DNA of 64,000 nt, taken from the NCBI RefSeq assembly GCF_016433145.1, contig NC_058136.1:2933370-2997369 (forward strand), written 5' to 3'. The position numbers were made by a program, and so were the translations under genes. Position 1 is the stretch's first letter; each line of letters opens with the position of its first letter. Shown one piece after another: positions 1,552 through 63,284 of the stretch. Origin of the DNA: Gracilinanus agilis (lineage: Eukaryota). The notes beneath the pieces are model-generated. The model had not been told where the DNA came from, searched no databases, and worked only from the letters and a program-made list of their open reading frames with translations.

Positions 1552-1632
1552 TTACCAGTTGAAGAATGTATTTCGCCCGAGGGTCATAAAGTAAATCTGA
1601 CTGGAGCCAGATTGGACAGAGGCAAAAAATAC
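1552..1632 (-). CDS. Last coding exon of GCK-IV kinase (CNH C-terminus)
   Basis: Acceptor ttttttttctcccctaag|GTA; 81 nt, phase 0; VFFASVQSGSSQIYFMTLGRNTFFNW*; matches the family terminus VFFASVRSGGSSQV[YF]FMTL...W. Confidence 0.97.
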   Translation of the reverse strand, partial: VFFASVQSGSSQIYFMTLGRNTFFNW

Positions 1633-1905
1633 CTTAGGGGAGAAAAAAAAAGAGAAGTTGAGACATCATCAGCTGGCAGTTTAGAAATTTTCACCTGATA
1701 TTTGAAAGAGAGAAAAAAGGCTTAACACCACAATTTCAATTCACTTTCACATATTCAATGAGAAAAATTCCACTGATTGTGCAAGCTTTACTTTTTGAAA
1801 CTTACTGATTTTAAAAAATGAGGGTCAATGTTAGGGATAGGAGGAAAAGGCTAAATTAATATGAAGTCTGAAATGAATTTTAGACTCTTTTAACACTAAT
1901 GCAAA

Positions 1906-2094
1906 GGGAAGCTAGGTAGCACAGTGGATAGAACTCCAGGCCTGGATTTGGGAGGACCTAAGTTCAAATATGGCTCAGAACAGTTATTAACTGTGTGACC
2001 CTAGGCAAGTCACTTAACCCCAATTTCCTAGCCCTTGCTACTCTTGTCTTAGAAACGATATTAAGACGGAAGGAAGGTAAGAGTTTAAAAAAAG
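1906..2094 (+). mobile_element. Opossum SINE1-type CORE-SINE, older copy
   Basis: gggaagctaggtagcacagtggatag...gtgtgaccctaggcaagtcacttaacccc...aagagtttaaaaaaag. Confidence 0.75.
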
Positions 2095-2145
2095 AGAGAA
2101 AGAAATGGAGTGTTATCACTTTCTAATACATGTGGTATAAATCCA

Positions 2146-3120
2146 AGAATCTTAGAGGCCTCTAATCCAACCCATCTCTGAATAAGAATCCTACTCTATG
2201 ATAATACATGTATAACCCAATGGAACTGCTTGTTGGTTCTGGGAGGGGGGAGGGGAAAAGAGGAGGGAAAGTACATGAATCATGTAACCATGGGAAAATA
2301 CTTAAATAAAAATTAAAAAATAAAAAATAAATTAAAAAAGAAGAATCCTACTCTATAGTATTCCAGACAAATGGGCTTTCTACCTCTGCTTGGAGATCTC
2401 CAGAGAAGGGAAGCTCACCAATTCCCAGGGCAGCTCATGCCACTTGGAGAGAGTCCAAGCTATTTTTCCTTACATTAAATTCAAATCTCTCCCCACCCCA
2501 CCCCATTGCTTCTAGTTCTGTTCTCTGGGCCAAGTAGAACAAGTTTCAACTCTCATCCATGTGACAACCCTTCAAGGAATTGAAGACTGTTTGTTATCAT
2601 GTTGTGCTCTTCTCCAGTTTCTTCAACTGATCCACATATGATATGGGCTCAAATCTTCTCACTATTCTGATTGCCCTCTTCTGGACATACTCCAGTTTGC
2701 CTGTGTGCTTTCTAAAATGTCCTGGCCAGAATGGAACTCAATCCTCAATTTCCTCAATCTGTAAAATGAGGAGGTTGAACTAAATGATAGCTAAGGTCTC
2801 TTCTAACCTTAGAACCCATTTATTTTATTTCCAATACAGTCTGACTACGGCAGGATAGCATTTCAGAATTATTGCCACTTCCCTTCTTTGAGGTATTACA
2901 TTCTTTTTAGCTGCCATGCCACACTGTCAACTTAAACCCCAGATTTTTTCAGACAAATGGTCCTTCTGACCATTTAATACTTGTGAAGATGATTATTTTA
3001 ACCCAATTGTGAACCTTTATATTGACCCCTCATCATTCTATGCTGTTGAGACCTTTGTGGATCCTGACACAGACAATGTATTAGCTACTGCTCCTAGTTT
3101 TGTATCACTTACAAATCCAC
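2146..3120 (-). mobile_element. L3/CR1 LINE 3' fragment, interrupted
   Basis: Starts agaatcttagaggcctctaatccaaccc (reverse of the L3 tail), followed by typical L3 body; split by an L1 stub and a MIR piece. Confidence 0.6.
2200..2340 (+). mobile_element. L1 3' stub (141 bp)
   Basis: L1 3' UTR (catgaatcatgtaaccatgggaaaa) plus A-rich tail; perfect 16-bp TSD aagaatcctactctat at 2184..2199 and 2341..2356. Confidence 0.9.
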
Positions 3121-3139
3121 TAGGATTATCATCATTATC

Positions 3140-3360
3140 ATGACAGTCATTTATATAGTGCTTTAAGGTTTCCAGAGCCCTTTACCAATATTATCTAATT
3201 TGTTCCTATTTACAGTGGAAGGTAAGTACTATTATTATCTTCATTATACAGAGAAGAAAACTGAGGCAGAAATAGGTTAAGTATTACAGAACTAGGAAGT
3301 GTCTGAAGCTGGATTTGAACTCAGGCCTTCCTGACTCCAGGTCTAGCACTCTCCCTACTA
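3140..3360 (-). mobile_element. MIR-type SINE
   Basis: catttatatagtgctttaagg...gaaaactgaggcaga...ggatttgaactcaggccttcctgactcc. Confidence 0.75.
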
Positions 3361-4804
3361 CACAGGGTCACTACAGTATCTCTTTTTATGGTTTCATTTA
3401 AGTTGTTTTTGGAGATGTTGAACAAAAAAGGGTAGATTCCTGGGAGTGCTATATTACAGAACACGTCTTTTGCTGCCCCTGGGCACAAGATGAAACTAAC
3501 TCTGCCAACTTCCACTTTTATTCTTCTGAGGACAACTTAGTAGCTGCCTGCCAAAAGTCAGTACAGCCCAAACTCATTTGGAATCATCCCAAGTTGGGAC
3601 TTTGTACAGTAGGTCCAGATCATTGGGGTAAACAGAACAGTACTAGAATAAGCCCAGAATACATTGACTTTCTCCTGCCATGGCTAAAAATGACTCCTTC
3701 CACTCCATCATGTCTTCAGCACAGACCATATAGAGCAGACTTTCAAAAGTAGTGGAAGGATCTGCCTGCTAAGTAGCTGTCTTGTAGGGCTGTGTGTGCC
3801 CATGTTATGGGCTTTTTATTGACAGCTGTGATATGTGATAACTCTTTTTTTCATCTAATGAAACATATGCATGCTGAAATGGGGCCAACCAAAGATGTCA
3901 TTCAGCATGATGCAGTAGAAAGTTCACTGAATGTCAGAAGATCTGCATTCAAATCCCTGCCCTGACACTTATTACCTATGTGACCTTTTGGGTATTCTGT
4001 CTCCAACCTGGGCCTGGGTTCCTCTTTTATAAAATGAAGTGGTTGGACTAGATAACTTTTGAGGTCTTCTGATTCTGACCCAAAGGCCTCACCTGATTGA
4101 TGCATTCATTATAAGTCACCTTGGCTGTGTACTGGCCCAGCCTGCTGCCCACTCTCGGACACATGTGCTTTCTAACTTAAGCTTAACAAAGGTCCCCCAT
4201 TCTAAGCTCTGCCTTCTCATTCCTGCTAGCCTCTTGCCTGGAATCTGGAATCATTTGCTTTGGCTATCAATATTAATCAAATCAAAGACAGATGCCAAAC
4301 TTGCACTTTACTTCTGGCTACTCAAACAGCTTTAAGAGGCTATCTCACAGTCTGTTTAAAGGCCTTATTTTAATCTGAAAAGAAAAGGGTCTGTGGCTCA
4401 AATACAATAACCTGTTCTGCAGCAAAAGAAATAATGGCTAAACTCTGCTTGGGACATGACTGAAATCTTTGATTTTTATTGCACATGTTTTTCTTTGGAA
4501 ATCACATTTAATCTTTTATTCAATCAAGAAATGTTCCAGCTATTTCTGCTAGGAAAGGTGAATTTGCCTTTGGCAGAATTATGCAGACAGGTTTCTTAAT
4601 GAGAAGCAAGGAAAGGTATATCTCTCACTTGGTTAAACTAGTTAATTTCCAACTAGTTTAACTGACTGGGCTTCACCATTTGGGGGGAGGGAGCATGGTT
4701 AGTTCTTTCTTAATGGAAAAGCAAGGAAAAGCACATCTCTCACTTGGCTAAACCACTTAATTTCCAACTTATACTGGTTAATTGTTCCTTTAGAACATAT
4801 ATAC

Positions 4805-4944
4805 CTTGTCATTTCGTTCACACAGAAATTTGAGCTTCTGGGATTTCTTGTGCATGAACACTCCTTCCAGGTTTCCAGCTTCAACAGAGCGTAGCTCAAT
4901 TGCTCTCTCTCCCCAGCCCATTATCTGGTTTGACTGGAGATAGG
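4805..4944 (-). CDS. CNH-domain exon
   Basis: ttttctgtcactag|CC ... GACAAG|gtatat; 140 nt, phase 1 to 0; (A)[46 protein letters not shown]. Confidence 0.97.
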
Positions 4945-5309
4945 CTAGTGACAGAAAAACAAAAGGAAAAACTTAGAAAGCTGCCAGTTATGGTCCATTT
5001 TGAGTGACTGAGAGGCTGACTATTCAGATTGTGAATGAACCAGCCTGTCCTTTGCTGCCTTTCTTTCTCCCTTTGGCTGTAGCTTGCTGCCAGTAGCACT
5101 GTTTGGGATCTTGGTACTCAAACCTGTCCATGGTGCCAATTCTTTGCACCTTTGATAAGGGTCTATGACATCTGAAAGAAAGAGGACTTCTGGATTTCCA
5201 TTATTGATTAGATCCCTGATCCTCAACACAAGAGAGAATCTAGAGTGCTTTTTAAACAAACAAATGGAAATTCAATCAACTCATGCCCCTTATTTAAATA
5301 CAATATAAT

Positions 5310-5590
5310 CCGATCAATGAGTATTATTAACACCCTCTATATTCCATGCACTGTGCTTGGGATACTAATGTCCCTAGATATTAGCACTAGGGATTCAAAG
5401 GCAAAAATGAAAATGCCCCTGCCTTCAAGGAGCTTACACTTGATTAGGGAAGAAGATATAAGGATATCTATGTACATAATAAATACAACGTGATTCTGTA
5501 GGAGAAGGCACCAACACCTAGGGGTAGGGGAAGAGAGGATGGAGAGAAGCCTAAGTAGAAGATGGCACTTGAGCTTTGAAGGAAATGAAA
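5310..5590 (-). mobile_element. L2 3' fragment
   Basis: gcactgtgcttggg...aaaggcaaaaatgaaaatgcccctgccttcaaggagcttaca, the reverse L2 3' end signature. Confidence 0.6.
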
Positions 5591-6525
5591 TTCTAGGGGA
5601 GCCACAATTTATCTAGATTTATAAACCTGTTTAGCTAAAGTAGACAGGAACCAGAGAGACTCTTAGGGAGTGACAACCATTAAGGAAAAGGACTAGCTCA
5701 GTGAATTGATTATAGTGTTCGTAATGTAATTGAATAAATTTTCATGTTCAAAGTAGGCCTTAACCAGATTTGAAGTTTTTAAGTCTCTCTCGACCAAGAT
5801 TTTTAAGGTTTTAGCAGTTTTATATTACTTTATGGCAATAAAGATTATGACAATAAGTGCCTTAATGCAGAAATCCTCATTATGTAAATAACTGCTCAAC
5901 CACCTGGTGCTGTGAAGACAATGTCATTAAAGTTGAATGAAAGAGTCTGGAGCCTACATTTTTCATAGGGAAGCACATTTCCATAAATAAAGAAAAATCC
6001 TGACACTTAAATACTATCAAGGCTTTGACAGAAGGTGAAAAGATTCAGAAAAAAATTATATTAAGTAAAATAAAAAGATCATAATTCTGGACTCACCTAA
6101 ATTTTACTTTTCCTTTTTTTGTAAGAGGGAAGAAATTTAATACTACCAACCCATTTGTCTTTTTGAAGTTTTCTGGAGTTACTAGAATGTCTTTGTTTAA
6201 ACCAAAGCTGTCCCTGAGCTGTGGTTATTTATATCAAACAGGCATGAAAAGGCTTGTTAAAAGGTTATGACCCTTAAGTAGCAATCTCTTTGGTACTGAC
6301 AACTGTTCTGAGACAGAGAACATACCAAGAACTTGATAGTTCTCACATTCCCTTTCACAGTACATAGAAAATTGTTTGGGTCAAGATCCAAGTGCCCAGA
6401 GCCACCCAAACGAGCCATTCACCAACTTGTCTCAGTAGTGCCTCTTCCTCCTCATCCTTACCTGGTCTCATGTGGACTCTGACCCCCATAGTTGGTCATC
6501 TCTTCTTAGTATCAAACTTACCTCA

Positions 6526-6680
6526 TTTTTTTAACTCTGACCTTCTGTCTTGGAATCGATACTGTGTATTAGTTCCAAAGCAGAAGAGTGATAAGGGCTG
6601 GGCAATGGGGATTGTTAAGTGACTTGCCCAGGATCACACAGCTAGGAAGTGTCTAAGGCCAGATTGTAACTTAGGACTGC
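6526..6680 (-). mobile_element. SINE1-type, 5'-truncated
   Basis: ccttctgtcttggaatcgatactgtgtattagttccaaagcagaagag...gtgacttgcccagg. Confidence 0.8.
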
Positions 6681-7453
6681 ACCAAATTTATCTTTATATA
6701 TAAATAAGTGTTTAGTGCATTTAACTAATTATGTTGGTTTTCTGCTTCCTTAGATTGGACTTCTTTGTTTCCTTGCATCCCTAGCACTCAGGTTCCCAAT
6801 ATCCATGCCAGTGAGGAGACTTGGCTCCTAGTGGGCTCAGCACTTAGAAGGGTTTCCCCAGCAGATAATACTAACAGATCCAACTCTTGCATCCCACTCA
6901 GACAAGACTTGGCCATTCTTCTACTGACAATAGGTTCCCTAGAGACCAAAGTAATCACAGGTCTGGTCTAACCCCCACCACCACCACCATAGCACTTCTA
7001 AGTTTGCAAAAAGGTTTATGTCCATTTTTTTTTCATTTGAACCTCACAATAACCTTATATGGTAGGACTGGATTTCCAAAAATCAGGAGAGAGGTGAGGG
7101 ATTTCAGGCATGGAACAAGGCACATATTTTTAGGCATGGTCAGTGTGTCAATTTTCAGGCCTGGTGTTGTCTACACTGTGCCATCTAGCTGTCCCAGGTA
7201 GTAGCATTTAGAAATGGGGCTAGACTAGAACACTAGAGTATTTGACTGAGTATTCCAGAATTTTAAGACTCCATTGCACACCCTCTTCTCAGTACTCAGA
7301 AAGGGCCACAATTATTTACATGTCTTAGTTGCTAGAAAGATACCTCAAAAAGGGGAGTAGGCCTTTTTAGTGTCACTTGCCCAAAGAGTCTTCTAAGGAT
7401 TTTTTCTGATTTTAATAGCTTCCAGAGTGATTGCATTTATGACTCTATATTCT

Positions 7454-7685
7454 GTGGCAGCTAGGCGGCACAATGAAGAGAGTGCTGGACCTGGATTCCA
7501 GACCACACTCTTACTAGCTGTATGACCTTGGGCAAGTCCCTTAAGTATGGGCTGCCTCAGTTTCCTCATCTGTAAAATGGGGACAATAATCCTTGCACAG
7601 TTGTTGTGATTATCAAATGAAATAATGCTTTGTAAAGTTCTTTGCAAACCTTAACTTGCTACAAAAATGCCAGCTATTATTATTT
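7454..7685 (+). mobile_element. MIR-type SINE, near full length
   Basis: gtggcagctagg...gtatgaccttgggcaagtc...cctcagtttcctcatctgtaaaatgggg...gctattattatt. Confidence 0.8.
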
Positions 7686-9373
7686 TTTGGAGATTTAACC
7701 TATAAATAAAAATGTCTTTTTACAATGCTATCTTTAAACTTTAATTATAAGAATCATTACTTTTGAGATGGAAAGGAACTTAGAATTCATTCCATTTACA
7801 ATTCTATTTTATTTTTATGTAACTTTTAGGATTTTTAAATTTTTTTCCAGTTAATAAAGATTTATTTTCTTTCCTTTCTCCTCCTTCCTACCAAGAAGGC
7901 AAAAGCAAACCCTAATAACAAATATGGGTAGTTCAATAAAACAAACCCCCACATAGACCTTGTCTGAAAATGTGTTTCTCATTATTTATCTTCAGTCTCT
8001 CACCTTTCTATCAGAGGGTGGTCAGCTGCTTCATTATCTATATTATTTATTTTACATATGCATAAGGCAAAGTCTATAAAATTATATTAACTTTAAGAAA
8101 AGCAAAACCAATAGGGTCCATGACTAAGCCAGAGGGGCTTTTGGATGCCATTCCATGACCCCCTTCTACCCCAGAAGATAATTAAGAGTTCACCACCTCC
8201 ATAATTAATAATTAGGTCAGTGTAAGAAACTAATTCTGCTGCACATACTTCTTACCATTAACCCCATCTCTAGCTCATACTGTGCTGGATGTTTGGAAGT
8301 CCTACTAGAGATGTTCCATTACTTTTTCCCCTTTTAAAGCTCAAATGTTCTTTGGGGGAGACATGGGAAGCCTTATGAATAATGTTTTGAGGCTAGAGTA
8401 TAAGAAACACTGGACAGAGAGTAAGTCCTGGGTTCTTTGTACTGGTTTTGCCAATGGCTAGTTAATTACCCCCTTCTCCAGTTATATGTGAAGAAAGGGC
8501 TAGATTATAAAGGCTCTCCTTTTCCTTTCAGCTCTGATAGCCTATGTTTATGAAATAACCTTTTGGGTCAAGTATAGTTGTGCCTAAGGATAGTGGGCTG
8601 GGCTAGAAGAATGGAAGCAGTGATGTAGCAGATAAAGTGCTGGATGCGGAACTAGAAAGAAAAGTCAAATCCTATCTCTGATATGTGACTAGCTGTGGGA
8701 TCCTGTGCAAATCACTTAACCCTTTGAGCCTCAGTTTCCTTCTCTATAAAAATGGGGGAGTTGAATTGTATGGTTTCTGAGGTCCCTTCCAGCTTAAGAT
8801 CTCTGATTGTAACCCTATGACTTTTTACCATCCCTTTGATCCCTACAACTAAGTATCAAATGGTGTTAATACAGTGACTCTGGATTTCCTAGTAGAAATG
8901 AACTTCCTTATTTCTGTTTCTGATGAACATGTTGGTTGCAGAGATATCACTGTAAAGATTAGACCCAGATCTGTTATTTTTAGGTTCTTTTGCCCCAGAT
9001 CTGCCAATTATGTTGCAAGTCTTAGCCTTCTCTGTCACTGAAAATGGGCTCCTTGAGAGTTGATGGTTTCCAACCTTTTCTGGGCTCTCACCTATTTGAA
9101 GAAATGGGGACACGTTTTTAGGGCACTTTTTCAAATAGGGTCACAGATTCTCCTCTTTTTGAATACTGGTATGGTTGCTGTTAGAAAACATAAATGCTCA
9201 TGCTAAAGAAGCTCTCTCACCTCAACTCCACCACAGGTTCCTACTGCCACAGACAGCCTAACCTAATTGAACTAGAGAGAGAAAGGTCAAGAGGAGCTAA
9301 GAAAGTTTATTGAATATTTGACTCTAATGCAAGGGCAAGGACAGGATGGTTGGGTAACTGATCAGGTGGACAT

Positions 9374-9600
9374 TTATTTATTTATTTATTTTAGTTAGTT
9401 TTTTTTTTTAACCCTTACCTTCCATCTTGGAGTCAATACTGTGTATTGGCTCCAAGGCAGAAGAGTGGTAAGGGTAGGCAATGGGGGTCAAGTGACTTGC
9501 CCAGGGTCACACAGCTAGGAAGTGTCTGAGGCCAGATTTGAACCTAGGACCTCCCGTCTCTAGGCCTGGCTCTTAATCCACTGAGCTACCCAGCTGCCCC
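9374..9600 (-). mobile_element. SINE1-type, young
   Basis: (TTTA)n/T tail, then aacccttaccttccatcttggagtcaatac...gagctacccagctgcccc; degenerate TSD tcaggtgg..attta. Confidence 0.92.
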
Positions 9601-10299
9601 CTCAGGTGGTTATTTAAATGGCTATAGTCCAGACATCTAACTTTCCATCATGGGTTGGGGGTGAAGAGTGGAGAAAATTTGTTTATGGGCCGCACAGCAA
9701 CAGGAATCTTCTGGCTAGACAGGCATATTTGCTTGAAGGTTCCTTTGGCCTGCTTGTGACACTCTTCTAGTGTCTCTGGTTTGCATGGAAAACAACTGAC
9801 CAAGTGGACTTTCTCAAATGTCTGAACACCAAGAAAATATCCTGACCAACACTACTCCTATGTTCAATTGAGCTGCAAAACAAGGAGATAGTTCTTATGC
9901 TAAAGGACAGCTCTTTTATTTAATATATGGGTGACCTTGAGTGTGTCACTTCCTCTCAATGAACCTCAGTTTCCTCATCTTAAAAATACTGGAATTGAAC
10001 AGCTGGAATCTGTAGAAGGTCATGACAATGAAGCCTCTTTACCCTAACCCTGTCACTGGTGCTTGAGGCCAGATAGAGTCCATTATAACTGAACTTGAGA
10101 AAGAAAGGTCAAGAGAGAATGAAGAAGGAATGGTTGGCCCTAACAAAACAGGGAGGAGAAAATGATACTTCTGTGGAAGAGTCAGATATCAGGAGAGCAC
10201 TCAACTAAAAGTACAAAATACAAAGGACTTGTACCCACAACCATAAACAGTCAAGACAACTCCATTTTTTTCTTGGAGTATTCCAAGGAAGTCAAAGAT

Positions 10300-10710
10300 A
10301 TAAAGAAAAGTCCCAAATACATGAAAGCATTCATAGCAGTACTTTTGGGGGGAGGGCTTTAAGGAACCGGACACATAGTAAATGTCTTTCTATTGGAGAT
10401 AGCTAAACAAGTGTGGTACATGAATAGAATGTAATATTATTGTACTGGATGAAATCATGAAGAAGAAGCATTTAGAGAAGCATGGGGAAGACTTCTATGA
10501 ATCTATCCTGGTGAACAGATGTGGAAGTACAGAAATGAGGCACATTAAATATGGAGTGCTACCTGTAGATAGTTCAGTTTGGCTTTATAATTTTATTTGA
10601 AATTCCTTATTAGAAGGATTCCATAAAGGAGGTGGGGGAAAGATATTAGGAAATGACTGTAATATAAAACAGCTGAAGTTTATCAAGGAAAAGAAAAATA
10701 AATGATAAAA
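10300..10710 (+). mobile_element. Old L1 3' fragment
   Basis: tcatagcagtacttttgg...aaacaagtgtggtacatgaatagaatgtaatattattg, an ORF2 end/3' UTR pattern. Confidence 0.55.
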
Positions 10711-11332
10711 AAATCAAATAACATGGTTGGTTGAGATGATCTCACAGCTACCTTCAAGTTCTCAATTTCCTAGTCCCATGATCCTATGACTACAGTCTGG
10801 GTGAGATAGTAAGTGGAGTTCATTAGAGAAAGAAGGCCAGTTGTCTTCATCTTTTATGGACTTGAACACAAGTTCTTGGTGTTTCATGTTCCCTGTGTTT
10901 TATGTGACTAGAAATCTATGAGCCTGGGAATTGTATCTACATGAAACACTACCACGAGGGATTTCAATATTTTCCACCCATTCTGTGTGTTGGTCTCTTT
11001 AATAAAGGCAGACACGAGAATAAACCATCCGGAAAGGAGAGCTTTTTAACTTGTCTGTATACATTCTGCATGGAGAGTGAATGAAAATAAAATTAATATA
11101 TGGTTATAGAATCAAATCTGATCAGATTTCAGCGATGTGATTATAGTGAATGAACACCAACATCTCAGAGTTTGTCATTGCCCCAAATGTTGTAAATACA
11201 GAATGCATATTAATCACTCAGCCTGCTGTGCTCTAATGAAAGGATGATTGAGGGTGGACCAGCTCCATTTTCAAGCTATCTGAGCATTTAAGAAGTCTCC
11301 ATCAAGCTATTTGGGTGGAGGCTTATACATAC

Positions 11333-11492
11333 CCACGCATCCTGGCATTTCTCCCCACTGCAAAATTGCTTCCTTAGTGAAATGTCCATATATGTCAACA
11401 TAGACACCTTCATCTTCATAGGTGAGCAGAAGTTCTGTGCCACTAGTATTGGGCAGAATGATGATAGTATGTGGTTGAATGGTTCCATGGAT
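11333..11492 (-). CDS. CNH-domain exon
   Basis: attattccag|ATC ... GTG G|gtatgt; 160 nt, phase 0 to 1; IHGTIQPHTIIILPNTSGTELLLTYEDEGVYVDIYGHFTKEAILQWGEMPGCV. Confidence 0.96.
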
Positions 11493-51096: not shown

Positions 51097-51145
51097 TAGG
51101 ATGACTAGATGCCCTATTTTGGCTGGGACACTTCCAATTTTTGAC
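51097..51145 (+). mobile_element. Ancient hAT-Tip100-like terminal fragment
   Basis: taggatgactagatgccctatttt ggctgggaca resembles tagggtgaccaga...ggctgggaca ends (from memory). Confidence 0.3.
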
Positions 51146-52008: not shown

Positions 52009-52260
52009 GGGCAGGTAGGTGATGCAGTAGATACAATTGCCAGGCCTGAAATCAGGAAGACATCTTCCTGAGATCAAATCCAGCCTCAGATGCTTACTAG
52101 TTGTGTGACTCTGGGCAAGTCACGTTACCCTGTTTGCCTCGGTTTCCTCCTCTGTAATATGAGCTGGAATAGGAAATGGCAAAACATTCCAGGATCTTTG
52201 ACAAGAAAACTCCAAAGAGGGCCATGAAGAGTCAGATATGACTGAAAAATGACTGAACGA
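52009..52260 (+). mobile_element. MAR1-type CORE-SINE
   Basis: gggcaggtaggtgatgcagtag...gagctggaataggaaatggcaaaacattccagg...gaagagtcagatatgactgaa. Confidence 0.85.
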
Positions 52261-53603: not shown

Positions 53604-54101
53604 CAGGGATTCTTAACCTGGGGTTCACAAACTTGATTTTTAAACAAACAAATATATAATATATAATATATAATATTTCCATACAATTGGTTTCCTTTGT
53701 AATCTTAATATATTGTATTTACAAGCATGAATCTAAGAAGAGGGCCATTGGCTTCGCCAGATTGACTACCTAGGGATCCATGAGTCAAAAAGAACCCGTT
53801 GGAGCAGAAACACAGAAGAAGAACAACTGCCTGACCACATGGGTCAGTGGGGATATGGTTGGGGATGCAGACTCTAAGTGACCACCCTAATGCAAATATC
53901 AATAATATGGAAACAGGTCTTGATCAATGATACATGTAAAATCCAGTGGAATTGCTCATTGGCTACAAGAGGGGGATGGGAAGAGAGGAGGGAAAGAACA
54001 TGAATCACGTAACCATGGGAACATTTTCTTAATTAATCAATAAAATTTAAAAAAAAATACTAGGGAAAAAAGAACCCCTTGTCCTTGTTAAGAATTCCTT
54101 G
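53604..54101. mobile_element. Old hAT-Charlie-like element interrupted by an L1 stub
   Basis: cagggattcttaacc ... gttaagaattccttg flanked by tctagag on both sides. Confidence 0.45.
53798..54066 (+). mobile_element. L1 3' UTR stub
   Basis: gagcagaaacacagaagaag...catgaatcacgtaaccatggg...A tail; TSD aaaaagaaccc at 53787..53797 and 54067..54077. Confidence 0.88.
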
Positions 54102-54444
54102 TCTAGAGACCGAAGGCACCTCTGAGGCCACCTGGTTCAACCTCTTCATTTTATGCAGGAGTAAATTGAAACCCAGGTAGGGGAAATAAGTTGCTCAGAG
54201 TCACATGGGGAGCAAGAAGCAGAAGTGGGGTTTGAACTCAAGGTTTTCTAATATGGTCTTTCTATTGGATCGTACTGTCTTCCTTAGGTTCTGACAAGTT
54301 TTGGTTAAACAAAATATTTTGAAATTTAATTTGATTTCATGTTCATTAAAGAGATTTGTTATTTAAAGGAAGATCAATCCTTGTAAATAATATATACATA
54401 TATTTTTTTTCTAATGAAAATCTTTATAGGAGGTCTAGATCTCT

Positions 54445-55625
54445 AAGCCAGAAGCCTTCTCAATAGGATCAGAAGTGAAACAAGAATGCCCATTATCACC
54501 AATATTATTTAAAATAGTATTAGAAACACTACCAATAGCAACAAGATTAGAAAAAAATGAAGGAAGAAAAATTAGCAAAGATGTAATAAAACTATCTTTT
54601 TGCAGACAATATGATAATGTATATGGAAAATCATAGAGAATCAACTAAAAAGTCAGTTGAAAATATCAATAATCTTAGTAAAGTAGCCAGGTATAAAATA
54701 AACCCACGTAAATCATCAACATTTTTATACATTACTAACAAAGTCCTGAAAGAAGAGATAGACAAAGATATTCCATTTAAAATAACCACAAACAGAATAA
54801 AATACCAGGGAGTATAACTGCCAAAACAAACCCAGGAACTACATGAACATAATTATGAAACATTTTTATACAAATAAACTCAAATCTAAATAATTGGAGA
54901 AATATTAATTGTTCATGCATGGGCAGAGCCAATATAATTAAAACGACAATCCTATTTAAACTAATCTACTTATTCAAAGTCATCCAATTAAATTATCAAA
55001 AAATTATCTTATTGAGCTAGAAAAAGTAATAATAAAATTCATTTGGAAGAACAAAAGATCAACATTAGCAAAAGAATTCATAAAAAACTGTAAAGGAAAG
55101 AAGTCTAGTAGTGCTGAACTTTAAATTGTATTATAAAGCAATAATTATCAAAACTATCTGGTATTAGCTAAGAAATAGAAAGGTGGAACAGAATGGACAT
55201 ACAACAAACAGTAGTAAAAGATTATACTAACCTTGTATTTGACAAAAGTATAGTACCAGGTTCTTGGGATAAGAAATCACTATTTGGTAAAAATTCTGGG
55301 ACAACTAGAAGCTAGGTATAGACCACTATCTTACACCATTCACTAATATAAGATCAAAATGGATACATGATCTAGACATAAAAGGAGATATCATAGGCAA
55401 ATTAGAAGAATTGGGAAAATATTACCTATCAGATTTATGGATAAGAGAGGAATCTATGAGTAAACAAGATATAGGGTACTATGAGATGTAAAATGGATAA
55501 TTTTAAGTACATTAGACTGAAAAGTTTTTGTGCAAATAAAACATGTTGCCAAGATTAGAAGAAAAGCAGAAAATTGAGAAAGAATTTTCATAGACAGTCT
55601 CTCAGACAGAGGTATCATATCTACA
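54445..55625 (+). mobile_element. Older L1 ORF2 fragment
   Basis: Degenerate RT-to-C-terminal sequence (caagaatgcccattatcacc, ctttttgcagacaatatgata, ttcatttggaagaacaaaag). Confidence 0.85.
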
Positions 55626-57035
55626 CCATTACCACCTCTAAGCTCCAGTTGGGAACTAGGAGAAAGGCAGACTTGTAACTGAATAATCTTATTTAATCCT
55701 TTAGTACTAGAGAGCACCCCAATTCTTAGCAATTACCAATGTGAGAGAACTAGCTTTGAGTAAGTTCCTAACACCCATGAGAAATGCTATGACTGTAACT
55801 TCTAGTCAAACTTGTCAGCACTGGGTGTCTACATGATTGACTACTCAGAAACTTTGGTTGATACAGCTGATGGCTAGAGAATGTAAGCTTCTTGAGGGTA
55901 GGTAGGGACTATCTTGTTTTTGTCTTTATGACTCCAGCACCTAGCACATTTAAGAAACTCTTATTGAATGACTGAATGGCCAGGCAAACAGCCCCAGTCT
56001 CCACTGATCAGTGGAATAACACTTTTCAAGTGCCATCATTCTACTGATAGCATCTGCTATCAGACTTGCATAGTAGCCATCCCAGCTTTGAAAATGTCAC
56101 TTCCTTTTTCATTTTATACTCAAATGATTTGTTTAGAGGAAGGAAAAGATGCACAATTATACAACAGTCCTGTGCAAATGCCCTTCAATTTTCCTAACAG
56201 CTATAGTCCTGCTAGAAGCCTTCCTACTTGCATTTCAAAATTGGATTTCTGGTCTTATCTTCAAAATGCTTCACTGTGTGCTTATACTGATTTCTACTGG
56301 AATGTTTTCTTTGGTTGCTCAATTAAATTTCACTGGAATCTTTTCATTGGTTGCCCAATTAAAAGGCTCATTTTCTCCCCTTGCTATCAATGAGTTCATT
56401 CTAATATAGTACAGTACAGATACAGGGCAGAAATATTTCTGTGTGGCAGCTATTCAAGTATAAGATTTCACTAGGTTAATAAAAAAAGAATAGAGCATAA
56501 AGAATAAACCAAAATGAGCTAATGGGTATTAACAGTTGCTTCTTTCTACTACTATCTGGAGACAAAAGATAATGGCAAAAGTTTTTCAAGTCTACAGTTA
56601 AACAATCTAAATGTGTTTTGAGTAGCCAGCTATGGCCAGGTAAGGATTAATAAGAAATTTATTTTTCTTTGAAATTGGACCTGTTGTTTCGCTGACCTAG
56701 GGAACTTCCAAAGGAGGAAACTCCTTCTACCAGAGCAGATTGGCATTTGCCCTGCCACCTGGGTCACTGAGAGGTTAAGTGACTCATCCGTGATCACACG
56801 GCTAGGGTGTCCTGACTTCAAGGCTGGCTGTCTCTTCAACAAGCTATGCTGCTTCTCAAAAAAAATCCTTGTTTTATTCCTCCATATTACTTTGAATGAA
56901 TTTATATGTTGGAACGAGAGCTGAAAAAATATAGCCAGTTATCTAGATATCTTTATGCATTCACATGGTGGATATTGTATAGAAAATCTACAACACTGTG
57001 TCAGATCTGAACTAAGAAGGAAAAAGGGAAATTAC

Positions 57036-57213
57036 CTCCAAACCCTGTCCTGACTGATGCTCAGCAGTAAAACCCCGCAGAGGGATGGATAGTTCTTCAG
57101 ATATGCTATGGAGTGAACCTTGGAGACTCTTTCCAAGGGAGTATGGAAGACCAATACCAGCCGCCCTGGAGAACTTCTAGCTGGAGAGCCCCAACAGGAG
57201 ACTGGTAGCAGCC
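57036..57213 (-). CDS. Candidate intermediate-region exon (3' boundary uncertain)
   Basis: Strong acceptor gtgtttttcttcctttggcactggtttag| and donor GAG|gtaatt. The phase-1 frame is open (GLLPVSCWGSPARSSPGRL...) but ends in phase 2; weaker internal phase-0 donors exist. No clear homology. Confidence 0.35.
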
Positions 57214-58345
57214 CTAAACCAGTGCCAAAGGAAGAAAAACACTAACACTATATAGGCAGAGGGCCTGGCCTTGGATCCTGACCCTGCTTCTGCCAAATTG
57301 TACCTTGACAAATTGTACCAAATTGACAATTTCTGAGACTCAGTTTCCTTCTCTGGTCACAGGGGGATAATAATAATAGCTGTATCTATACTGCAAGGTA
57401 GTTGTCAAGAATACACTTTGCAACCCTTAAAACACTCTAAAAATACAAGTTTATCATTACTGTCTTGTGTTTTCATACTCTGTGATGGGAATTATTCTTT
57501 TTTAAAAATCTTACTTGTCTCATCTCTTTCAAGGGTTCAAATAGTCCTGGTATTATTATTCTTTTATATTCTGTGTTCTATAGCTTATTGCACAGGCAGA
57601 TAAAATAACTGCTTTTATAGTTATTATTATTATACTGGATTTTTTTATTTTATTGTATGGGAAACCCCTGACAGAAGCACTCCCTTTACCAATACAGATT
57701 GCCACCTTCTCTTCAACTTAAAATCTTAGTGTAAGTGACTTGCCCAGGGTCACAGAGCCAGAATGTGTCAGAAACAAGAGTCAAACCCATGGCTTCCTGA
57801 TTCCAAGGTCAGCTTCCAATCCATTAAAACATGCTGTCTTATTATTGCTCATTTGTTGCTTATTAATAGAACAGTCATAGGACACAGGGACAACATTAAA
57901 GGCTGAGATTGCCAACAAAACCCAGGCTAGGGTTCACCACCCCTCCAACCCACTACCAACAAGAATATGTCCCCATTTCTTGCTCTGGGGTGGAGAAATG
58001 GAGGCAGAAAGGTGAAGGTGGGGATTCCTCTTTCCATAGTTTTTCCCAAGTCCAGAGGAGTTTGTTTAGACAGTAGTTTCGTTTATGGTCAAGATATTTG
58101 TTCCCTAACAAGTTACCAGGTCCAACTGAGACACTGAAAGCCTTCTATTGCCTCCAAAAGCAATACCACTCAGGTATGAACTGTTGGAAGGAAAGCTTCG
58201 TAGGAAACAAGACTGTGGCAGTATCTACTGAGATACAAAAGTGGTTTAGTGGTTTTAGTGAGCCTGTCTCACTGGGGTTGACTTAACATGGACTGTTAGA
58301 CATTAGCTATGCATTGGGACTGTTCAAGCTTGACTCGAAATTCAC

Positions 58346-58461
58346 CTGGTGTTGCTCTGTTGGTCACCCGACATTCCATTGCCCACTGTCTGTTGCCAGT
58401 GAATTTACTGCCAGTCTTTGGCTTCTGAGGCCATCCCCCAGAAGATGGCGGCTGGGAACTA
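58346..58461 (-). CDS. Intermediate-region exon
   Basis: gattttctgtcttttcag|T ... CCA G|gtgaat; 116 nt, phase 2 to 1, as I recall for the paralog exon after VPxRTTS; SSQPPSSGGWPQKPKTGSKFTGNRQWAMECRVTNRATP. Confidence 0.7.
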
Positions 58462-60905
58462 CTGAAAAGACAGAAAATCACTTACCACTTGTTGGCATTC
58501 AAAAAAGGAAAGCACAAATTACCTTACTAGACCAATGGCCAGATTTCTTTCGAGATCAACACATCACAGACTGATGAAGGTGAGTGGGACTGTGTGTTCA
58601 TGTAAGTGTATGAGCTTGTGTGTATAGGCAGATGTGTGTGTTAATGGATCATGGATATAGTACCTAAATTTTGCCCCAAATATTTCAACTTATTTAGAAT
58701 TAAGTTTCTTGATTGTGGTTATGGGTAAAGGTGGCTAATTTAAGATTACCCCTCATACCTTCCACATGAATTTAATATTAGAAAATCCTAACATTTTTAC
58801 ATGTCCCAGCTTCAACTACAAAACTTCTTAGTGGAGGGAGTTTTCTCACTTGGAAATTCCCACACAAATGAATTCAGATTTCTGGCCAAAAGCAAAACCC
58901 CAAAAACAAACATAGTTACTTTGTTGGAATGGAGAGGCGGTGGATAGATAGAGCTTGAACCCAGATTTGGGAAGTTCTGAGTCTCATCAGCAGATAACCT
59001 AATCTCCTGGAAGTTTCCTTTTCCTTGTATATAAAACAAGGATAATATTACCCATAGTTTCTATTTCTCATGTTTATTCTAAGAACCAATTTAAATAATC
59101 AGTGGAAAGCACTTTGTAAGCCTTTTGCAAGGAGTAACCATATATTAAGAGCTAGTATTCCTGTAGTGCTTTGTACTTTGCAAAATGCTTTAATCCTTAT
59201 GAAAACCTTGTGAGCTGGGTGCTATCATCCCCATTATATAGATGACTAAACTGAGGCACAGAGAGGTTATGTGACTGGCCCAGAGTCATACAACTATTAA
59301 GTGTCTGAGGCAAGATTTGGAATTCCAGTCTTCCTGACTCCAAGGCCAGAGCATTCTCCACTCTGCCACCCAGCTGTCTCCCACATCAATGAGATGAAAA
59401 AGCTCTAGGAACATTGAAGAATTCCCAAGACAGCCCGGTGGTTAAAGGTCTCCTTTGCTGTAGGGATAGCAGTTGGCTCATGTAGACCTTGGACACACCA
59501 GAAGCCCACATGCTGGTTTTTCCAAAAACTTCTATTCACGATTTTACTTTATGCAATAGCTGGTTTCCTGAAAAGTTACTTGTATAATAACTTCTATAAA
59601 CTGGATGCTATTTTAAATGTCCTAAGGGTTTTCTCCTTGGCTTTCTCATAAGATTCTGTCCTGGCCCCTTCCAATTCTATTTTGCAGTTGTTACTTGTTA
59701 TCTTCCCTAGATTGGAGGTTACCTGAGAAGAGGGACTCTGGATTTTTAGCTTAGCACACAGTAGACAGTAAATGTGTCCACACTTAATCCAGACCAGACT
59801 GAATAGAAGAATTCACTTTTGAAAGGCCCTTGGGATGTATGTTTTGTTATACTAGAACACCAGCTACCTCTCAGTCTGTAAATCTGGGTTTTTTTTAAGT
59901 AAAGAGATCCTGCTATGTAACAACTATTGATTTCTATGGTGGTTTTCTTCCCCTTGAGCTTAGAAAGCCACAGCTAACCATTTCTGGGGGTGGAGGAGAG
60001 AAAACTGGCAGTCATACTTTCAGATGCTTCTGGTGGAGTTGGGCCTCATTTAAAGCTTAGGGAAAGAAAAGAAACAAGGGCTTAAGAAGTATCATCTAGC
60101 TATAAAGAAGAGTTGCCATAACTTGGCTTCCATTCCCAAGGTTTTATAACTTTGCTCCCTCTCCAAAAGGGGATCTATAACTCTAGTACTACTCATCCCA
60201 TGGAAGGGTTTCTCTTAAGGTAAGAGCACTGTACACTTCCTGTCAGACCAGGACTTGGTGTGTACCTAAAGTGTTTCAAAGAAAGATAGGCTAAAAGAAA
60301 AATGAAACAACCAATAAGAGAGACTTAGAAAACAGTGACTGCAGCCATTATCTTAAATCCTGGAATATTCCTTGGAGCTTTTGGTCTGATTTTTCCCTTT
60401 GTGTCTCTCCTGTCTCTTTACTGGTATTAACTCCTGATGTGAGAGACTGGTGTGTATGTGTTGAGTGCATAGTTTTTGCTGACTGAACTACATTGAAGAT
60501 CTATGTGGGCATTTGTTGCAAGGTATCCCCCTTGTTGTTGCAGTCGTCTTTAAAATGGTTAATTCTGGTAAACCATGATTAAGGCAATGGGGGAGTCAGC
60601 TTGGGCTTCCAAGTCACATGGTCAATGGTGAAAGGGGAAGGCTTTCGAGCCAAATTGTCAACTAGTTTAAGTTTGGAAATTTGGCTGCCTCAGATGTGGG
60701 TAAAATAAAGTTTTAAAAATTTTTCAAAAGAAATCATTTCAACTGTGGTTGCAGTCTGGAGGCCAAAGAAGATTGGGGGCATTCCGAACATTCTGGGTTT
60801 GACTTCAATCAGAGAGAGTCTGGAACCACTGAGGCTGGCTTCAGTTTTCCAAGGGGCCATAAATAAATCACTATGGGCTTGAACACAGAGTGCAGAGATA
60901 CTTAC

Positions 60906-60973
60906 ATTGGATAGCGGCGGGCCTGGTTGATGATATCCTTGCTACGGAATTTTGAGGTTGTTCTTTCTGGGAC
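60906..60973 (-). CDS. Intermediate-region exon (VPxRTTS motif)
   Basis: ggttatatctttaag|GTC ... CCA AT|gtaagt; 68 nt, phase 0 to 2; VPERTTSKFRSKDIINQARRYP; matches TNIK VPQRTTS / MAP4K4 VPVRTTS. Confidence 0.9.
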
Positions 60974-61244
60974 CTTAAAGATATAACCAAATATTTCAGT
61001 GCAATTCTCCACCATTGAAAATTCAAGGCATTAATTTCAGAATGACTGGTACATATACATATACATAAAGTACATATACCCTTGATAAATCAGATGAGAA
61101 GGAGAGTGGAACAGTGGATAGAGGGCTAGATTTGTAGAGTGAGGATCTGAGTTCAAATCTCATCTCCATTACTTCCTGTGTACCCTTGGACAATTTCCTT
61201 TCCATTCCCTGGGCCTGTTTCCTCCTATTTAAAATAAAGGAGTT

Positions 61245-61465
61245 GGGGCACCTATGTGGGTCAGTGGATAGAGAACCATGCCTACAAATCTGACCTTACA
61301 CAGACACTTACTAGTTGTGTGGCTCTGAACAGTGACTTGACCCTGTTTGCCTCCATTTCTTCATCTGTAAAATGAGCTGGAGAAGGAAATAGCAAACCAC
61401 TCCAGTGTCTTTGTCAAAAAAAACCAAATGGGGTCAGGAATAATTGGACCCAACTGACTAAACAT
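61245..61465 (+). mobile_element. MAR1-type CORE-SINE
   Basis: ggggcacctatgtgggtcagtggatag...gagctggagaaggaaatagcaaaccactccagtgtctttg. Confidence 0.8.
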
Positions 61466-61649
61466 AAGTGAATGCTGATAGGCAAGAGGAAGTGTAGCTA
61501 GATAGAATATTTTAGGAACTGTATTCTCCAGTCTGGGATTAAGGAATTTTATATGTGCTTCTAATAACCTTACCTTGTTGTATTACTTTTGAATGGGTAT
61601 AATCTTTTGTTCATCTGTAAATATATTTCTTCAAATACACACAAAGAGA

Positions 61650-61835
61650 GAGTGAGCTAGGTCTAGAGATGGGAGGTTCTGGGTTCAAATTTGACCCCAG
61701 ATACTTCTTAGCTGTGTGAGCCAGGGCAAGTCACTTAACGCCTACTGCTTAGTCCTTAGCACTCTTCTACCTAGTAACTGATACTTACTATCAATTCTAA
61801 GAGAGAAGATAAGGGTTTTTAAATAAAAAATAAAA
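61650..61835 (+). mobile_element. SINE1-type, older, 5'-eroded
   Basis: gagctaggtctagagatgggaggttctgggttcaaat...aagggtttttaaataaaaaa. Confidence 0.75.
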
Positions 61836-63167
61836 CAAAGGGGTTGGACTAGGTGGCCTCAGAGGTCCCCTCTAGTTTTAGGACTAGGATCATTTGTGTG
61901 ACCTTGGGCAAATCCCTTCCCCTCCCTGGGCCTCAGTTTTTTCCTCTATCAATTCAAGGAGTTTGAGGTCCTTTAAGCTCTGGAGCTATAATCCATGATG
62001 ATGACCTCCTATTGAGTATTCTTTTCACAACACAGCACCATCTGTTCATTTGAGTCCAAAGTTCTCTGCTAGGGAGGGGATATTATATCATTTAGATCTG
62101 GAAGGGGCTTTCTGAATCTTCTAATTGAACCCTCTCATTTTAAATAAGAAGAAACTTTGATGCAGAGGTGATCAAGAAACTCAGGCTCAAGCCAAGGTCC
62201 TTAGACTTCCCTTTCAAAACCTTTTTTTAATGTAGGCTCAATTTTCATCTCTGCCATGAAATTCCCTTGCCTATAACAGAAGGGGCTTCATACTTTCTAA
62301 AAAGTCTTCCAGCTCCAGCAGTGTATGATTTGGGGATTCCATAAAGCCTTTTCCACTAGCTCTAACCCATAGGGAACTCTCATTTAACTGATGTTCTACA
62401 TAGAATTTGGTGCCTGGATCACATAATGCAGTCCTCGATTCTTTTGCATTTAGTTGCCTCACATATGTCTAAGTCTTCTCCTCCCAACAACACTTGGAGG
62501 TTCTATACTTGTTCCACAAATCCCACCCATGTACCTTGGTACATGGGCCTTCAAGAAATTCTTACAAAGACTTCCCTCTTCTTCAGTAGAGGAGGGAGAC
62601 TACAAATGCTGAATGCTAAGAAATGGGGTACAGGTTGCTTTGCTTCTATCTTTTATTGGTTATAAGCAAGGGTTCTATTGATAAAATACTGTGGTATATT
62701 AAAAAAAGAACAAGAGGTATCACTGATGATACGGAATCTGGAGTGTTACAATGGAACCCTGGTGATATCAGGAGAAAGTGAGGAAAGCCTCTAGGATGTT
62801 GGTTGGATGTGTGGAAGGACATGAACAAGAGTGGCTCAGAATGGGTGTGCATGGATTGAGGAATGCCTGAATTGCTGAGATAACAGAGTCATTAGAATAG
62901 TTAAAAATCATGTAACTTTTTTTAAAAATAGCATTTATTTCTTTCCTTCTCCCTCCCCCCCCCAAATGCCAAAGTGCGTTGAATGGAAATGATCATGCTT
63001 TGGGACATTATGGAAGCAGCCAGATGTTTTTTTTTGAGCCAGATGTTTTGCATTACTTCCCCCACCCCCTCCAGAAGCTAAATCAGAGCTAGAAATCTTC
63101 CCTCACTTTATCTATCAAACAGAGTAAAATGAAAGGGAATTAAATAATCACTGATAAGAAGTAGTAC

Positions 63168-63284
63168 CTTAGGAGGCTGATCTTCAACTGGGTACTTGCT
63201 CCAAAACGGATCATCTTGCCCTGAGGTTTTAGGCCTGATGGCCACGTCTGAGAGTGAGTAGCTGTGGTGGTTGTCTTTACTTAG
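63168..63284 (-). CDS. Intermediate-region exon ending in PPK
   Basis: aacctccag|CTA (alternative in-frame acceptor gives start 63299) ... CCT AAG|gtacta; LSKDNHHSYSLSDVAIRPKTSGQDDPFWSKYPVEDQPPK; joins VPERTTS as in the paralog PPK|VP junction. Confidence 0.82.

What the first reader, a model, noticed from the sequence alone, without database searches (positions are those of the whole stretch)
1552..63284. Divergent fourth GCK-IV kinase with an intact, ancestral-looking CNH domain (probable marsupial NRK)
Seen: eight phase-consistent exons (33697..33846 to 1552..1632) give a stop-free CNH domain with the family exon layout. Known: the CNH domains of MAP4K4, TNIK and MINK1 are nearly invariant across mammals, while X-linked eutherian NRK is heavily diverged and restrains trophoblast proliferation. 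This protein sits in between. It keeps [13 protein letters not shown] and FLCERNDK but carries many substitutions (FQQID, LLLTYED, LEGVF, KSQKL); several recall NRK as I remember it. It ends at NW* with no C-terminal extension. Inference: a pre-eutherian-style NRK, useful for dating when NRK acquired placental specialisation.
Basis: partly seen in the sequence, partly recalled or inferred. Interest (0 to 1): 0.75.

Follow-up and report, generated by a model that had tools for sequence, protein, structure and literature searches.

The report
Opossum NRK gene, already annotated
This window holds the back half of the NRK kinase gene of the agile gracile opossum, still in its pre-placental ancestral form; the gene is real and intact, but it is already in RefSeq and marsupial NRK has already been used in print to date the placental change, so it is ordinary.

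Summary
The eight minus-strand exons (33846..33697 to 1632..1552) exist, have GT-AG borders and consistent phases, and encode a complete CNH domain ending in NW-stop.

The window is Gracilinanus agilis. All 16 exons of the RefSeq model found here (63299..1552) match RefSeq XP_044538588.1 ("MAP4K4-like", 1441 aa) at 605 of 605 residues.

The NRK reading is supported:
- **Identity:** the CNH is 99% identical to Monodelphis "nik-related protein kinase", 89% to platypus NRK, 88% to chicken NRK, and 76-80% to TNIK and a MAP4K4-type paralogue.
- **Tree:** a maximum-likelihood tree places it in the NRK clade (100/99). AU tests reject grouping it with either paralogue (p about 1e-7).
- **Ancestral type:** the basic-residue count equals platypus and chicken, and no extra exon interrupts the CNH. 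It therefore lacks the eutherian lipid-binding signature.

None of this is new. Lestari et al. 2022 and Liu et al. 2021 already analysed opossum and other marsupial NRK for exactly this dating question.

Side notes: the RefSeq model seems mis-spliced in the middle region. It skips a vertebrate-conserved exon (42500..42407) and reads a marsupial-only cysteine-rich cassette exon (38771..38691) out of frame.

The parts
63168..63299 (-). NRK middle-region exon (residues about 836-879 of XP_044538588.1); the gene continues upstream, beyond the window end
   Evidence: tblastn 100% inside the exon; AG acceptor at 63301-63300 and GT donor; platypus and chicken NRK match here
60906..60973 (-). NRK middle-region exon with the family-wide PPKVPERTTS motif
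58346..58461 (-). NRK middle-region exon
50095..50183 (-). NRK middle-region exon
47643..47758 (-). NRK middle-region exon (acidic serine-rich SSSSEE segment); ends with two bases of an Arg codon
42407..42500 (-). 94-nt exon conserved in all vertebrate NRK (LSNGG.DF.RTR motif). It is intact here but absent from the RefSeq model of this species
   Evidence: 32/33 identical to Monodelphis; matches platypus and chicken; pyrimidine tract-CAG acceptor and GTAAAG donor; keeps the frame open
38691..38771 (-). 81-nt marsupial-only cassette exon beginning VFCCCFEDG. RefSeq reads its last 59 nt (from 38749) in a shifted frame
   Evidence: 27/27 identical to Monodelphis and 25/27 to wombat and koala isoforms; absent from koala X2, tammar and devil models and from all non-marsupial proteins held
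37240..37301 (-). 62-nt exon used only by the RefSeq G. agilis model to regain frame; doubtful
   Evidence: GT-AG borders and part of XP_044538588.1; its peptide has no counterpart in any other marsupial NRK
35294..35423 (-). NRK exon (serine-rich, FTSFLDPKLLQ motif) with two in-frame donors: 35309 (RefSeq, GTATCT) and 35294 (GTAAGT). The 35294 donor adds RIFGS, as in other marsupials
33697..33846 (-).
30602..30745 (-). CNH exon (FQQID)
   Evidence: query of the representative search
21380..21514 (-). CNH exon ([18 protein letters not shown])
15166..15266 (-). CNH exon ([13 protein letters not shown])
14014..14163 (-). CNH exon
11333..11492 (-). CNH exon (LLLTYED)
4805..4944 (-). CNH exon ([18 protein letters not shown])
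1552..1632 (-). Last coding exon, ends ...FFNW plus stop (1554-1552). No AATAAA on this strand in the 1.5 kb that follow, so the 3' UTR probably runs past the window start

Best explanation
The window is the 3' 62 kb of the roughly 234-kb NRK (Nik-related kinase) gene of the agile gracile opossum, Gracilinanus agilis, transcribed from the minus strand. It encodes the last 600 or so residues: a fast-evolving, largely serine-rich middle region and a complete C-terminal CNH beta-propeller. Together with the N-terminal Ste20-type kinase domain encoded upstream of the window, this makes an intact GCK-IV kinase of the ancestral vertebrate NRK type. Inferred mechanism: it works like chicken NRK and the paralogues MAP4K4, TNIK and MINK1, as a cytosolic Ste20 kinase whose CNH is a protein-binding regulatory module. 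It probably does not work like eutherian NRK, whose remodelled CNH binds phosphatidylserine through three polybasic clusters and brings a CK2-inhibitory region to the plasma membrane to restrain trophoblast growth. Shown here: identity of the gene, intact exons, the fold, clade membership, and absence of the eutherian basic-residue gain and of any exon inserted in the CNH. Inferred: cellular localisation, binding partners and expression.
For: - **Species and gene:** the spliced window exons equal RefSeq XP_044538588.1 at 605/605 residues. The gene spans 234 kb on an 82.25-Mb record of GCA_016433145.1.
- **Named relatives:** Monodelphis 99%, other marsupials 82-96% (the 82% Dromiciops model carries a spurious 50-aa insert), platypus 89%, chicken 88%, down to lungfish 87%, all named nik-related protein kinase. 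TNIK is at 76-78% and the MAP4K4-type clade at 80%.
- **Tree:** NRK clade 100/99, marsupials 100/100. AU p = 7e-07 and 2e-07 against grouping with the paralogue clades.
- **Domains:** Pkinase 34-298 (E 5e-63) with GxGxxG, HRDIK, DFG and APE intact; CNH 1138-1411 covering profile positions 1-254 of 255 (E 4e-55).
- **Fold:** AF2 model pLDDT 80, pTM 0.80. Best solved folds are CNH domains of Rom2 (5o51), HPK1 (8eec) and MRCK1 (7z6e).
- **Constraint:** CNH and kinase domains are 96-99% identical across marsupials, while the middle region is 61-94%.
- **Ancestral type:** K+R 34 and net charge +5, the same as platypus and chicken. The 18 basic residues of the three clusters are reported as conserved only in eutherian NRK (bioRxiv 10.1101/2023.12.27.573405). 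The CNH aligns to platypus and chicken with a single 1-residue gap, so there is no counterpart of eutherian exon 25 (PMC8857918).
- **Functional reference:** chicken NRK CNH does not bind phospholipid and is cytosolic (PMC8857918).
Against: - No eutherian NRK sequence could be fetched, so the distance to eutherian NRK rests on the literature.
- The CNH carries 30 differences from both platypus and chicken, and the marsupial stem is about five times longer than the platypus branch. Some change of function cannot be excluded.
- No RNA evidence was obtainable.
- MINK1 was not in the tree. Its placement elsewhere in this genome rests on an unchecked scan note.
- X-linkage and IL1RAPL2 adjacency were not tested here.
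Confidence: 0.93

Rival explanations
1. Transitional NRK: the roughly 9% of substitutions on the branch leading to marsupials include therian-stem changes shared with eutherians. On this view the opossum CNH or middle region already has part of the placental function (membrane association, CK2 binding) and acts in the yolk-sac placenta.
For: The marsupial stem branch is 0.092 against 0.017 for platypus, followed by strong conservation within marsupials. PMC8857918 reports a raised rate on the therian-ancestor branch (2.6e-9 against 0.012e-9 substitutions per site per year). Marsupials have a large extra middle segment and a conserved Cys-rich cassette exon.
Against: There is no net gain of basic residues in the CNH. 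The seven changes fixed in all marsupials at otherwise invariant sites are conservative (V/I, K/R, A/T, one 1-residue deletion). The marsupial middle insert found no eutherian match (a word-limited search). In one tammar study NRK is listed for eutherian placenta but not for tammar placenta, though gene naming could explain that.
Confidence: 0.1
2. A lineage-specific duplicate of MAP4K4, TNIK or MINK1 (as the RefSeq name 'MAP4K4-like' suggests), not NRK.
For: RefSeq names this protein, and those of wombat, koala and tammar, 'MAP4K4-like'. MINK1 was not represented in my tree.
Against: The same orthologue is named NRK in Monodelphis, Trichosurus and Dromiciops. NRK clade support is 100/99 and AU tests reject both constrained topologies. 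Identity is 88-89% to platypus and chicken NRK against 76-80% to paralogues. Several proteins named MAP4K4 (king cobra, croaker) also fall inside the NRK clade, which shows that the label is automatic. A scan note places MINK1 on another chromosome.
Confidence: 0.02
3. An unexpressed or decaying gene copy whose open frame is kept by chance or by recent origin.
For: No RNA evidence could be gathered here. NRK was not found in supplementary tables of two opossum pregnancy transcriptome papers.
Against: There are 16-17 exons with canonical splice sites and no stop in 1.8 kb of coding sequence under three alternative splice paths. CNH and kinase domains are 95-99% identical across marsupials that diverged tens of millions of years ago, while the middle region drifts.
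Confidence: 0.03

Closest known systems
RefSeq XP_044538588.1, 'mitogen-activated protein kinase kinase kinase kinase 4-like' [Gracilinanus agilis]
   Same: It is the very gene: 605/605 residues identical to the window's exons along the RefSeq splice path.
   Different: The name is uninformative; it should be NRK. Residues about 1011-1050 come from a splice path that skips the conserved exon 42500-42407 and reads the next exon out of frame. The Monodelphis-like path is open in the window and better conserved (606/627 against 551/604 identical to Monodelphis).
Monodelphis domestica nik-related protein kinase isoform X2 (1545 aa; used as 'opossum NRK' in PMC8857918 and bioRxiv 10.1101/2021.02.09.430412)
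   Same: CNH 99% and kinase domain 99% identical, with the same exon set including the conserved 94-nt exon and the Cys-rich cassette.
   Different: It is a different didelphid species. The middle region is 85-94% identical, with length differences in the marsupial insert.
Chicken and platypus NRK (ancestral-type NRK; chicken NRK was tested biochemically in PMC8857918)
   Same: Same domain plan, same NW C-terminus, CNH 88-89% identical, same basic-residue count, no inserted CNH exon.
   Different: Marsupials carry about 370 extra, fast-evolving residues upstream of the window. They lack the ...NQNYLLPDLLQQS... segment and have the cassette exon in its place. The CNH has 30 substitutions.
Eutherian NRK (mouse, human; X-linked, placenta-specific brake on trophoblast proliferation)
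   Same: Orthologous gene according to published synteny (opossum Nrk lies next to Il1rapl2; PMC8857918). Same kinase-middle-CNH plan.
   Different: According to the papers, the eutherian CNH is only about 40% similar to chicken NRK. It has three polybasic clusters, phosphatidylserine binding, extra exons 4, 12 and 25, and a CK2-inhibitory region. None of the features testable here (charge gain, extra CNH exon) is present in the opossum. No direct sequence comparison was possible.
MAP4K4 / TNIK / MINK1 (the other GCK-IV kinases)
   Same: Same family, same exon layout of the CNH, same ...NW end, 76-80% CNH identity.
   Different: They form separate clades (TNIK 99/97, MAP4K4-type 99/91); the window sequence is outside both.

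Membership tests
GCK-IV (MAP4K4/TNIK/MINK1/NRK) Ste20 kinases | C-terminal citron-homology (CNH) domain, complete | tested here: met
   Pfam PF00780 on single exons. On the identical database protein: residues 1138-1411, profile positions 1-254 of 255, E 4e-55. The AF2 model matches solved CNH propellers 5o51, 8eec and 7z6e.
GCK-IV (MAP4K4/TNIK/MINK1/NRK) Ste20 kinases | N-terminal Ste20-type kinase domain with catalytic motifs | tested here: met
   It lies outside the window but in the same gene (XP_044538588.1). Pkinase 34-298, E 5e-63; GNGTYGQV, HRDIK, DFG and GTPYWMAPE all present.
GCK-IV (MAP4K4/TNIK/MINK1/NRK) Ste20 kinases | Protein ends right after the CNH with ...YFMTL....NW | tested here: met
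NRK orthology group | Groups with NRK of other vertebrates to the exclusion of the paralogues | tested here: met
   NRK clade 100/99. AU p = 7e-07 and 2e-07 against the alternatives. MINK1 was not sampled.
NRK orthology group | Conserved neighbourhood (IL1RAPL2 next to NRK) and location on the therian X | not testable with these tools
   The window lies wholly inside the gene, and there are no neighbours within 10 kb of it. Opossum Nrk-Il1rapl2 adjacency is published (PMC8857918). The 82.25-Mb record is of the size expected for a didelphid X; that is my inference only.
Eutherian-type (placental) NRK | Polybasic clusters in the CNH (18 K/R in three sites) that bind phosphatidylserine | tested here: not met
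   K+R 34 and net +5, identical to platypus and chicken, and no charge-gaining pattern among the 30 substitutions. The clusters are described as eutherian-only in bioRxiv 10.1101/2023.12.27.573405. This is an indirect test: no mouse sequence was aligned.
Eutherian-type (placental) NRK | Extra exon inside the CNH (eutherian exon 25) | tested here: not met
   The CNH exons align to platypus and chicken with one 1-residue gap. PMC8857918 states that exons 4, 12 and 25 are absent from non-eutherians.
Eutherian-type (placental) NRK | CK2-inhibitory region in the middle of the protein; placenta-specific expression | not tested

The most novel reading that the evidence does not exclude
Marsupial NRK may have been remodelled in its own way, not simply left ancestral. 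In place of the vertebrate-wide ...LLPDLLQQS... segment, it carries an alternatively spliced 27-residue cassette exon (window 38771-38691). The exon starts with a hydrophobic residue pair followed by a cysteine triplet and is 25-27/27 identical between American and Australian marsupials. If that triplet is palmitoylated, it would give marsupial NRK a switchable membrane anchor. That would be an independent route to the membrane recruitment that eutherian NRK achieves through its lipid-binding CNH. In this species the exon is hidden by a mis-spliced RefSeq model.
Probability: 0.08. Interest if true: 0.45.

Novelty: already known. Interest (0 to 1): 0.1.

Why it matters
It matters little as a discovery. 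Three things are useful:
- Evidence that the RefSeq label 'MAP4K4-like' for this and several other marsupial proteins should read NRK.
- A likely correction of the middle-region splice model in G. agilis.
- A reminder that the one open question named by the published authors, whether NRK is expressed in the marsupial yolk-sac placenta, is still open.

Tried and rejected
- **Eutherian NRK for a direct comparison.** Two searches with marsupial-specific middle regions returned marsupials only. The CNH search lists only its best 120 hits, all non-eutherian NRK. The eutherian branch is therefore missing from my tree.
- **MINK1.** No labelled MINK1 was among the representatives. I labelled the camel/goby/sturgeon clade 'MAP4K4-type' from its C-terminal motif as I remember it, which is a lead only.
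- **PDB by sequence.** No chain matched the CNH. Fold search did work.
- **Synteny.** The scan's notes hold none of IL1RAPL2, SERPINA7, RNF128, TBC1D8B, CLDN2, MORC4, PRPS1, MID2 or ATRX. The contig look-up shows no gene within 10 kb.
- **Rfam.** Nothing in the window.
- **Literature on marsupial placental expression.** NRK is absent from supplements of two opossum papers. In the tammar study it is listed only under 'eutherian placenta and mouse mammary gland'. This is inconclusive, because the tammar gene is not named NRK.
- **Microexon idea.** A frame-closing microexon at 42705-42726 (scan note s1-179326) is not needed. The 94-nt exon at 42500-42407 closes the frame.
- **Joined model.** One exon was searched by reference. 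After that I used the stored database protein that equals the window's exons. Exons were joined only inside local scripts, to check junctions and frames.
Full report
**What is there**

The open stretches around them hit Pfam CNH individually. Two further CNH exons were found by motif scan at about 21.5 kb and 14.1 kb. With splice sites and phases worked out, the eight exons are:
- 33846-33697
- 30745-30602
- 21514-21380
- 15266-15166
- 14163-14014
- 11492-11333
- 4944-4805
- 1632-1552

All have GT-AG borders and all phases are consistent, ending ...FFNW-stop.

**Whose gene it is**

I searched one exon by reference (window:30603-30743:-) against the representative library. It returned a 1441-residue protein with a 100% match: RefSeq XP_044538588.1, 'mitogen-activated protein kinase kinase kinase kinase 4-like' of Gracilinanus agilis.

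tblastn of that protein against the window gives 100% identity inside 16 exons, covering residues about 836-1441. A local junction check reproduces the protein at 605/605 residues. The window is therefore G. agilis, in agreement with the scan's notes that this genome is an opossum. The gene is already annotated. It spans about 234 kb on an 82.25-Mb record of GCA_016433145.1, with no other gene within 10 kb.

From here on the stored, identical database protein stands in for it. Joins were made only inside local scripts.

**Is it NRK?**

A search with the CNH part of that protein returns, in order:
- Monodelphis 'nik-related protein kinase' at 99%.
- Other marsupials, named either NRK or 'MAP4K4-like', at 82-96%. 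The 82% value is the Dromiciops model, which carries a spurious 50-residue insert.
- Platypus NRK at 89%.
- About a hundred bird, reptile, amphibian and lungfish NRK clusters at 86-89%.

TNIK is 76-78% identical and a second paralogue clade (camel, goby, sturgeon; MAP4K4-type) is 80%.

I built an IQ-TREE of 33 CNH domains under LG+C20 (PMSF):
- The window protein pairs with Monodelphis (99/95).
- Marsupials form a clade (100/100).
- That clade lies inside a 25-sequence NRK clade (100/99) that runs from teleosts and lungfish to platypus.
- TNIK (99/97) and the MAP4K4-type clade (99/91) lie outside.

Forcing marsupials together with either paralogue clade costs about 70 log-likelihood units (AU p = 7e-07 and 2e-07). 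Proteins labelled 'MAP4K4' from king cobra and croaker also fall in the NRK clade, so that label is an automatic one. MINK1 was not sampled. An unchecked scan note puts MINK1 on another chromosome.

**How ancestral is it?**

LLLTYED and LEGVF are shared with platypus and other non-eutherian NRK. FQQID (also in lungfish) and KSQKL are marsupial changes.

G. agilis differs from both platypus and chicken at 30 of 312 CNH positions. Only seven differences are fixed in all marsupials at sites otherwise invariant in NRK, and all seven are conservative.

The marsupial stem branch (0.092) is about five times the platypus branch (0.017), and the branches within marsupials are short. That means a modest burst followed by constraint, consistent with the raised therian-ancestor rate in PMC8857918.

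Several checks support an intact, ancestral-type protein:
- The CNH has 34 K+R and net charge +5, the same as platypus and chicken.
- It aligns to them with a single one-residue gap.
- The full protein has intact kinase motifs and complete Pfam kinase and CNH domains.
- An AF2 model (pLDDT 80, pTM 0.80) best matches the solved CNH propellers of Rom2, HPK1 and MRCK1.

For comparison, the published features of mouse NRK CNH are:
- It is only about 40% similar to chicken NRK.
- It has three eutherian-only polybasic clusters (18 K/R) that bind phosphatidylserine.
- It contains the eutherian-only exon 25.

The opossum domain is therefore ancestral in type, not halfway.

**Mechanism**

- **Shown:** an intact kinase-plus-CNH protein under purifying selection in its two domains. 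These are 96-99% identical across marsupials, against 61-94% in the middle region.
- **Inferred:** it behaves like chicken NRK, which is cytosolic, does not bind phospholipid or CK2, and has no effect on AKT (PMC8857918). It would also resemble the paralogues, as a Ste20 kinase with a protein-binding CNH regulatory module. It would not act as the eutherian CK2-PTEN-AKT brake.

**Already known**

Lestari et al. 2022 (PMC8857918) identified NRK orthologues by synteny in marsupials, platypus, birds, reptiles, amphibians and fish. They defined a 'marsupial' exon-structure class and noted that opossum Nrk is adjacent to Il1rapl2. They placed the rate burst and positive selection on the CNH on the eutherian stem.

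Liu et al. 2021 (bioRxiv 10.1101/2021.02.09.430412) used opossum and Tasmanian devil NRK for the same purpose.

The authors name marsupial placental expression as an open point. Supplementary tables gave only an inconclusive hint: NRK is listed for eutherian but not tammar placenta.

**Side findings in the middle region**

Other marsupial and all non-mammalian NRK proteins have a conserved segment (...LSNG..DF.RTR...) after the acidic SSSSEE stretch. The RefSeq G. agilis protein instead has about 40 unconserved residues there.

The window contains the missing exon intact at 42500-42407:
- It is 94 nt long.
- It has a strong acceptor and a GTAAAG donor.
- It is 32/33 identical to Monodelphis.
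- Platypus and chicken NRK match it.

An 81-nt exon follows at 38771-38691, behind a strong pyrimidine tract. It is 27/27 identical to Monodelphis and 25/27 to wombat and koala isoforms. It is skipped in koala X2, tammar and devil models, and absent from every non-marsupial protein held.

RefSeq skips the first of these exons. It enters the second at a weaker acceptor (38749) in a shifted frame and adds a 62-nt exon (37301-37240) to regain frame. It also uses a weak donor (35309) where a consensus GTAAGT donor at 35294 yields the RIFGS residues seen in other marsupials.

All three splice paths are open. The Monodelphis-like path is 606/627 identical to Monodelphis, against 551/604 for the RefSeq path. 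The RefSeq middle region is therefore probably mis-modelled, but only reads can settle this.

The platypus and chicken segment ...NQNYLLPDLLQQS... has no counterpart between 42.4 and 35.4 kb.

Upstream of the window, marsupials carry about 370 extra fast-evolving residues. These found no non-marsupial match in a word-limited search.

**Verdict**

The exons are real and the NRK interpretation is right, though 'divergent' and 'in between' overstate the case. The content is already in RefSeq and in the literature, so interest is low.

Noticed in passing
window 42407-42500 (-), 38691-38771 (-), 37240-37301 (-), 35294-35309 (-): RefSeq XP_044538588.1 appears mis-spliced at residues about 1011-1050. 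It skips a vertebrate-conserved 94-nt exon, reads the next exon out of frame from a weaker acceptor, adds a 62-nt exon to regain frame, and uses a weak donor 15 nt upstream of a consensus one. The Monodelphis-like path is open and better conserved (606/627 against 551/604 identical).
   Followed up: partly
window 38691-38771 (-): Marsupial-only, apparently alternative 27-residue cassette exon beginning VFCCCFEDG. It is 27/27 identical to Monodelphis and 25/27 to wombat and koala isoforms. The cysteine triplet could be a palmitoylation site, which is speculation.
   Followed up: partly
window 35424-42406 (-): The segment ...QGLWNLNNQNYLLPDLLQQS... of platypus and chicken NRK has no detectable counterpart here. 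It is lost or unrecognisably diverged in marsupials.
   Followed up: partly
outside the window (residues about 415-800 of XP_044538588.1): Marsupial NRK carries about 370 extra residues that evolve fast. A search with the Monodelphis insert matched G. agilis at 70% and Australian marsupials at 33-51%, with no match outside marsupials (a word-limited search).
   Followed up: partly
window 23184-28157 (+) and 40231-40686 (+): Broken LINE retrotransposon (endonuclease and reverse-transcriptase ORF fragments), antisense to NRK, in the intron between the second and third CNH exons. It accounts for the A-rich, low-GC stretch at 24-28 kb. A second RT fragment lies at 40.2 kb.
   Followed up: partly
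window 1-1551 (-): There is no AATAAA on the gene's strand in the 1.5 kb after the stop codon, so the 3' UTR probably extends beyond the window start.
   Followed up: no
database proteins, not the window: Automatic names are unreliable in this family. 'MAP4K4' proteins of king cobra (ETE69058.1) and large yellow croaker (TMS17462.1), and 'MAP4K4-like' proteins of wombat, koala, tammar and several birds, all fall in the NRK clade. The Dromiciops NRK model carries a 50-residue insertion inside the CNH that looks like retained intron.
   Followed up: partly
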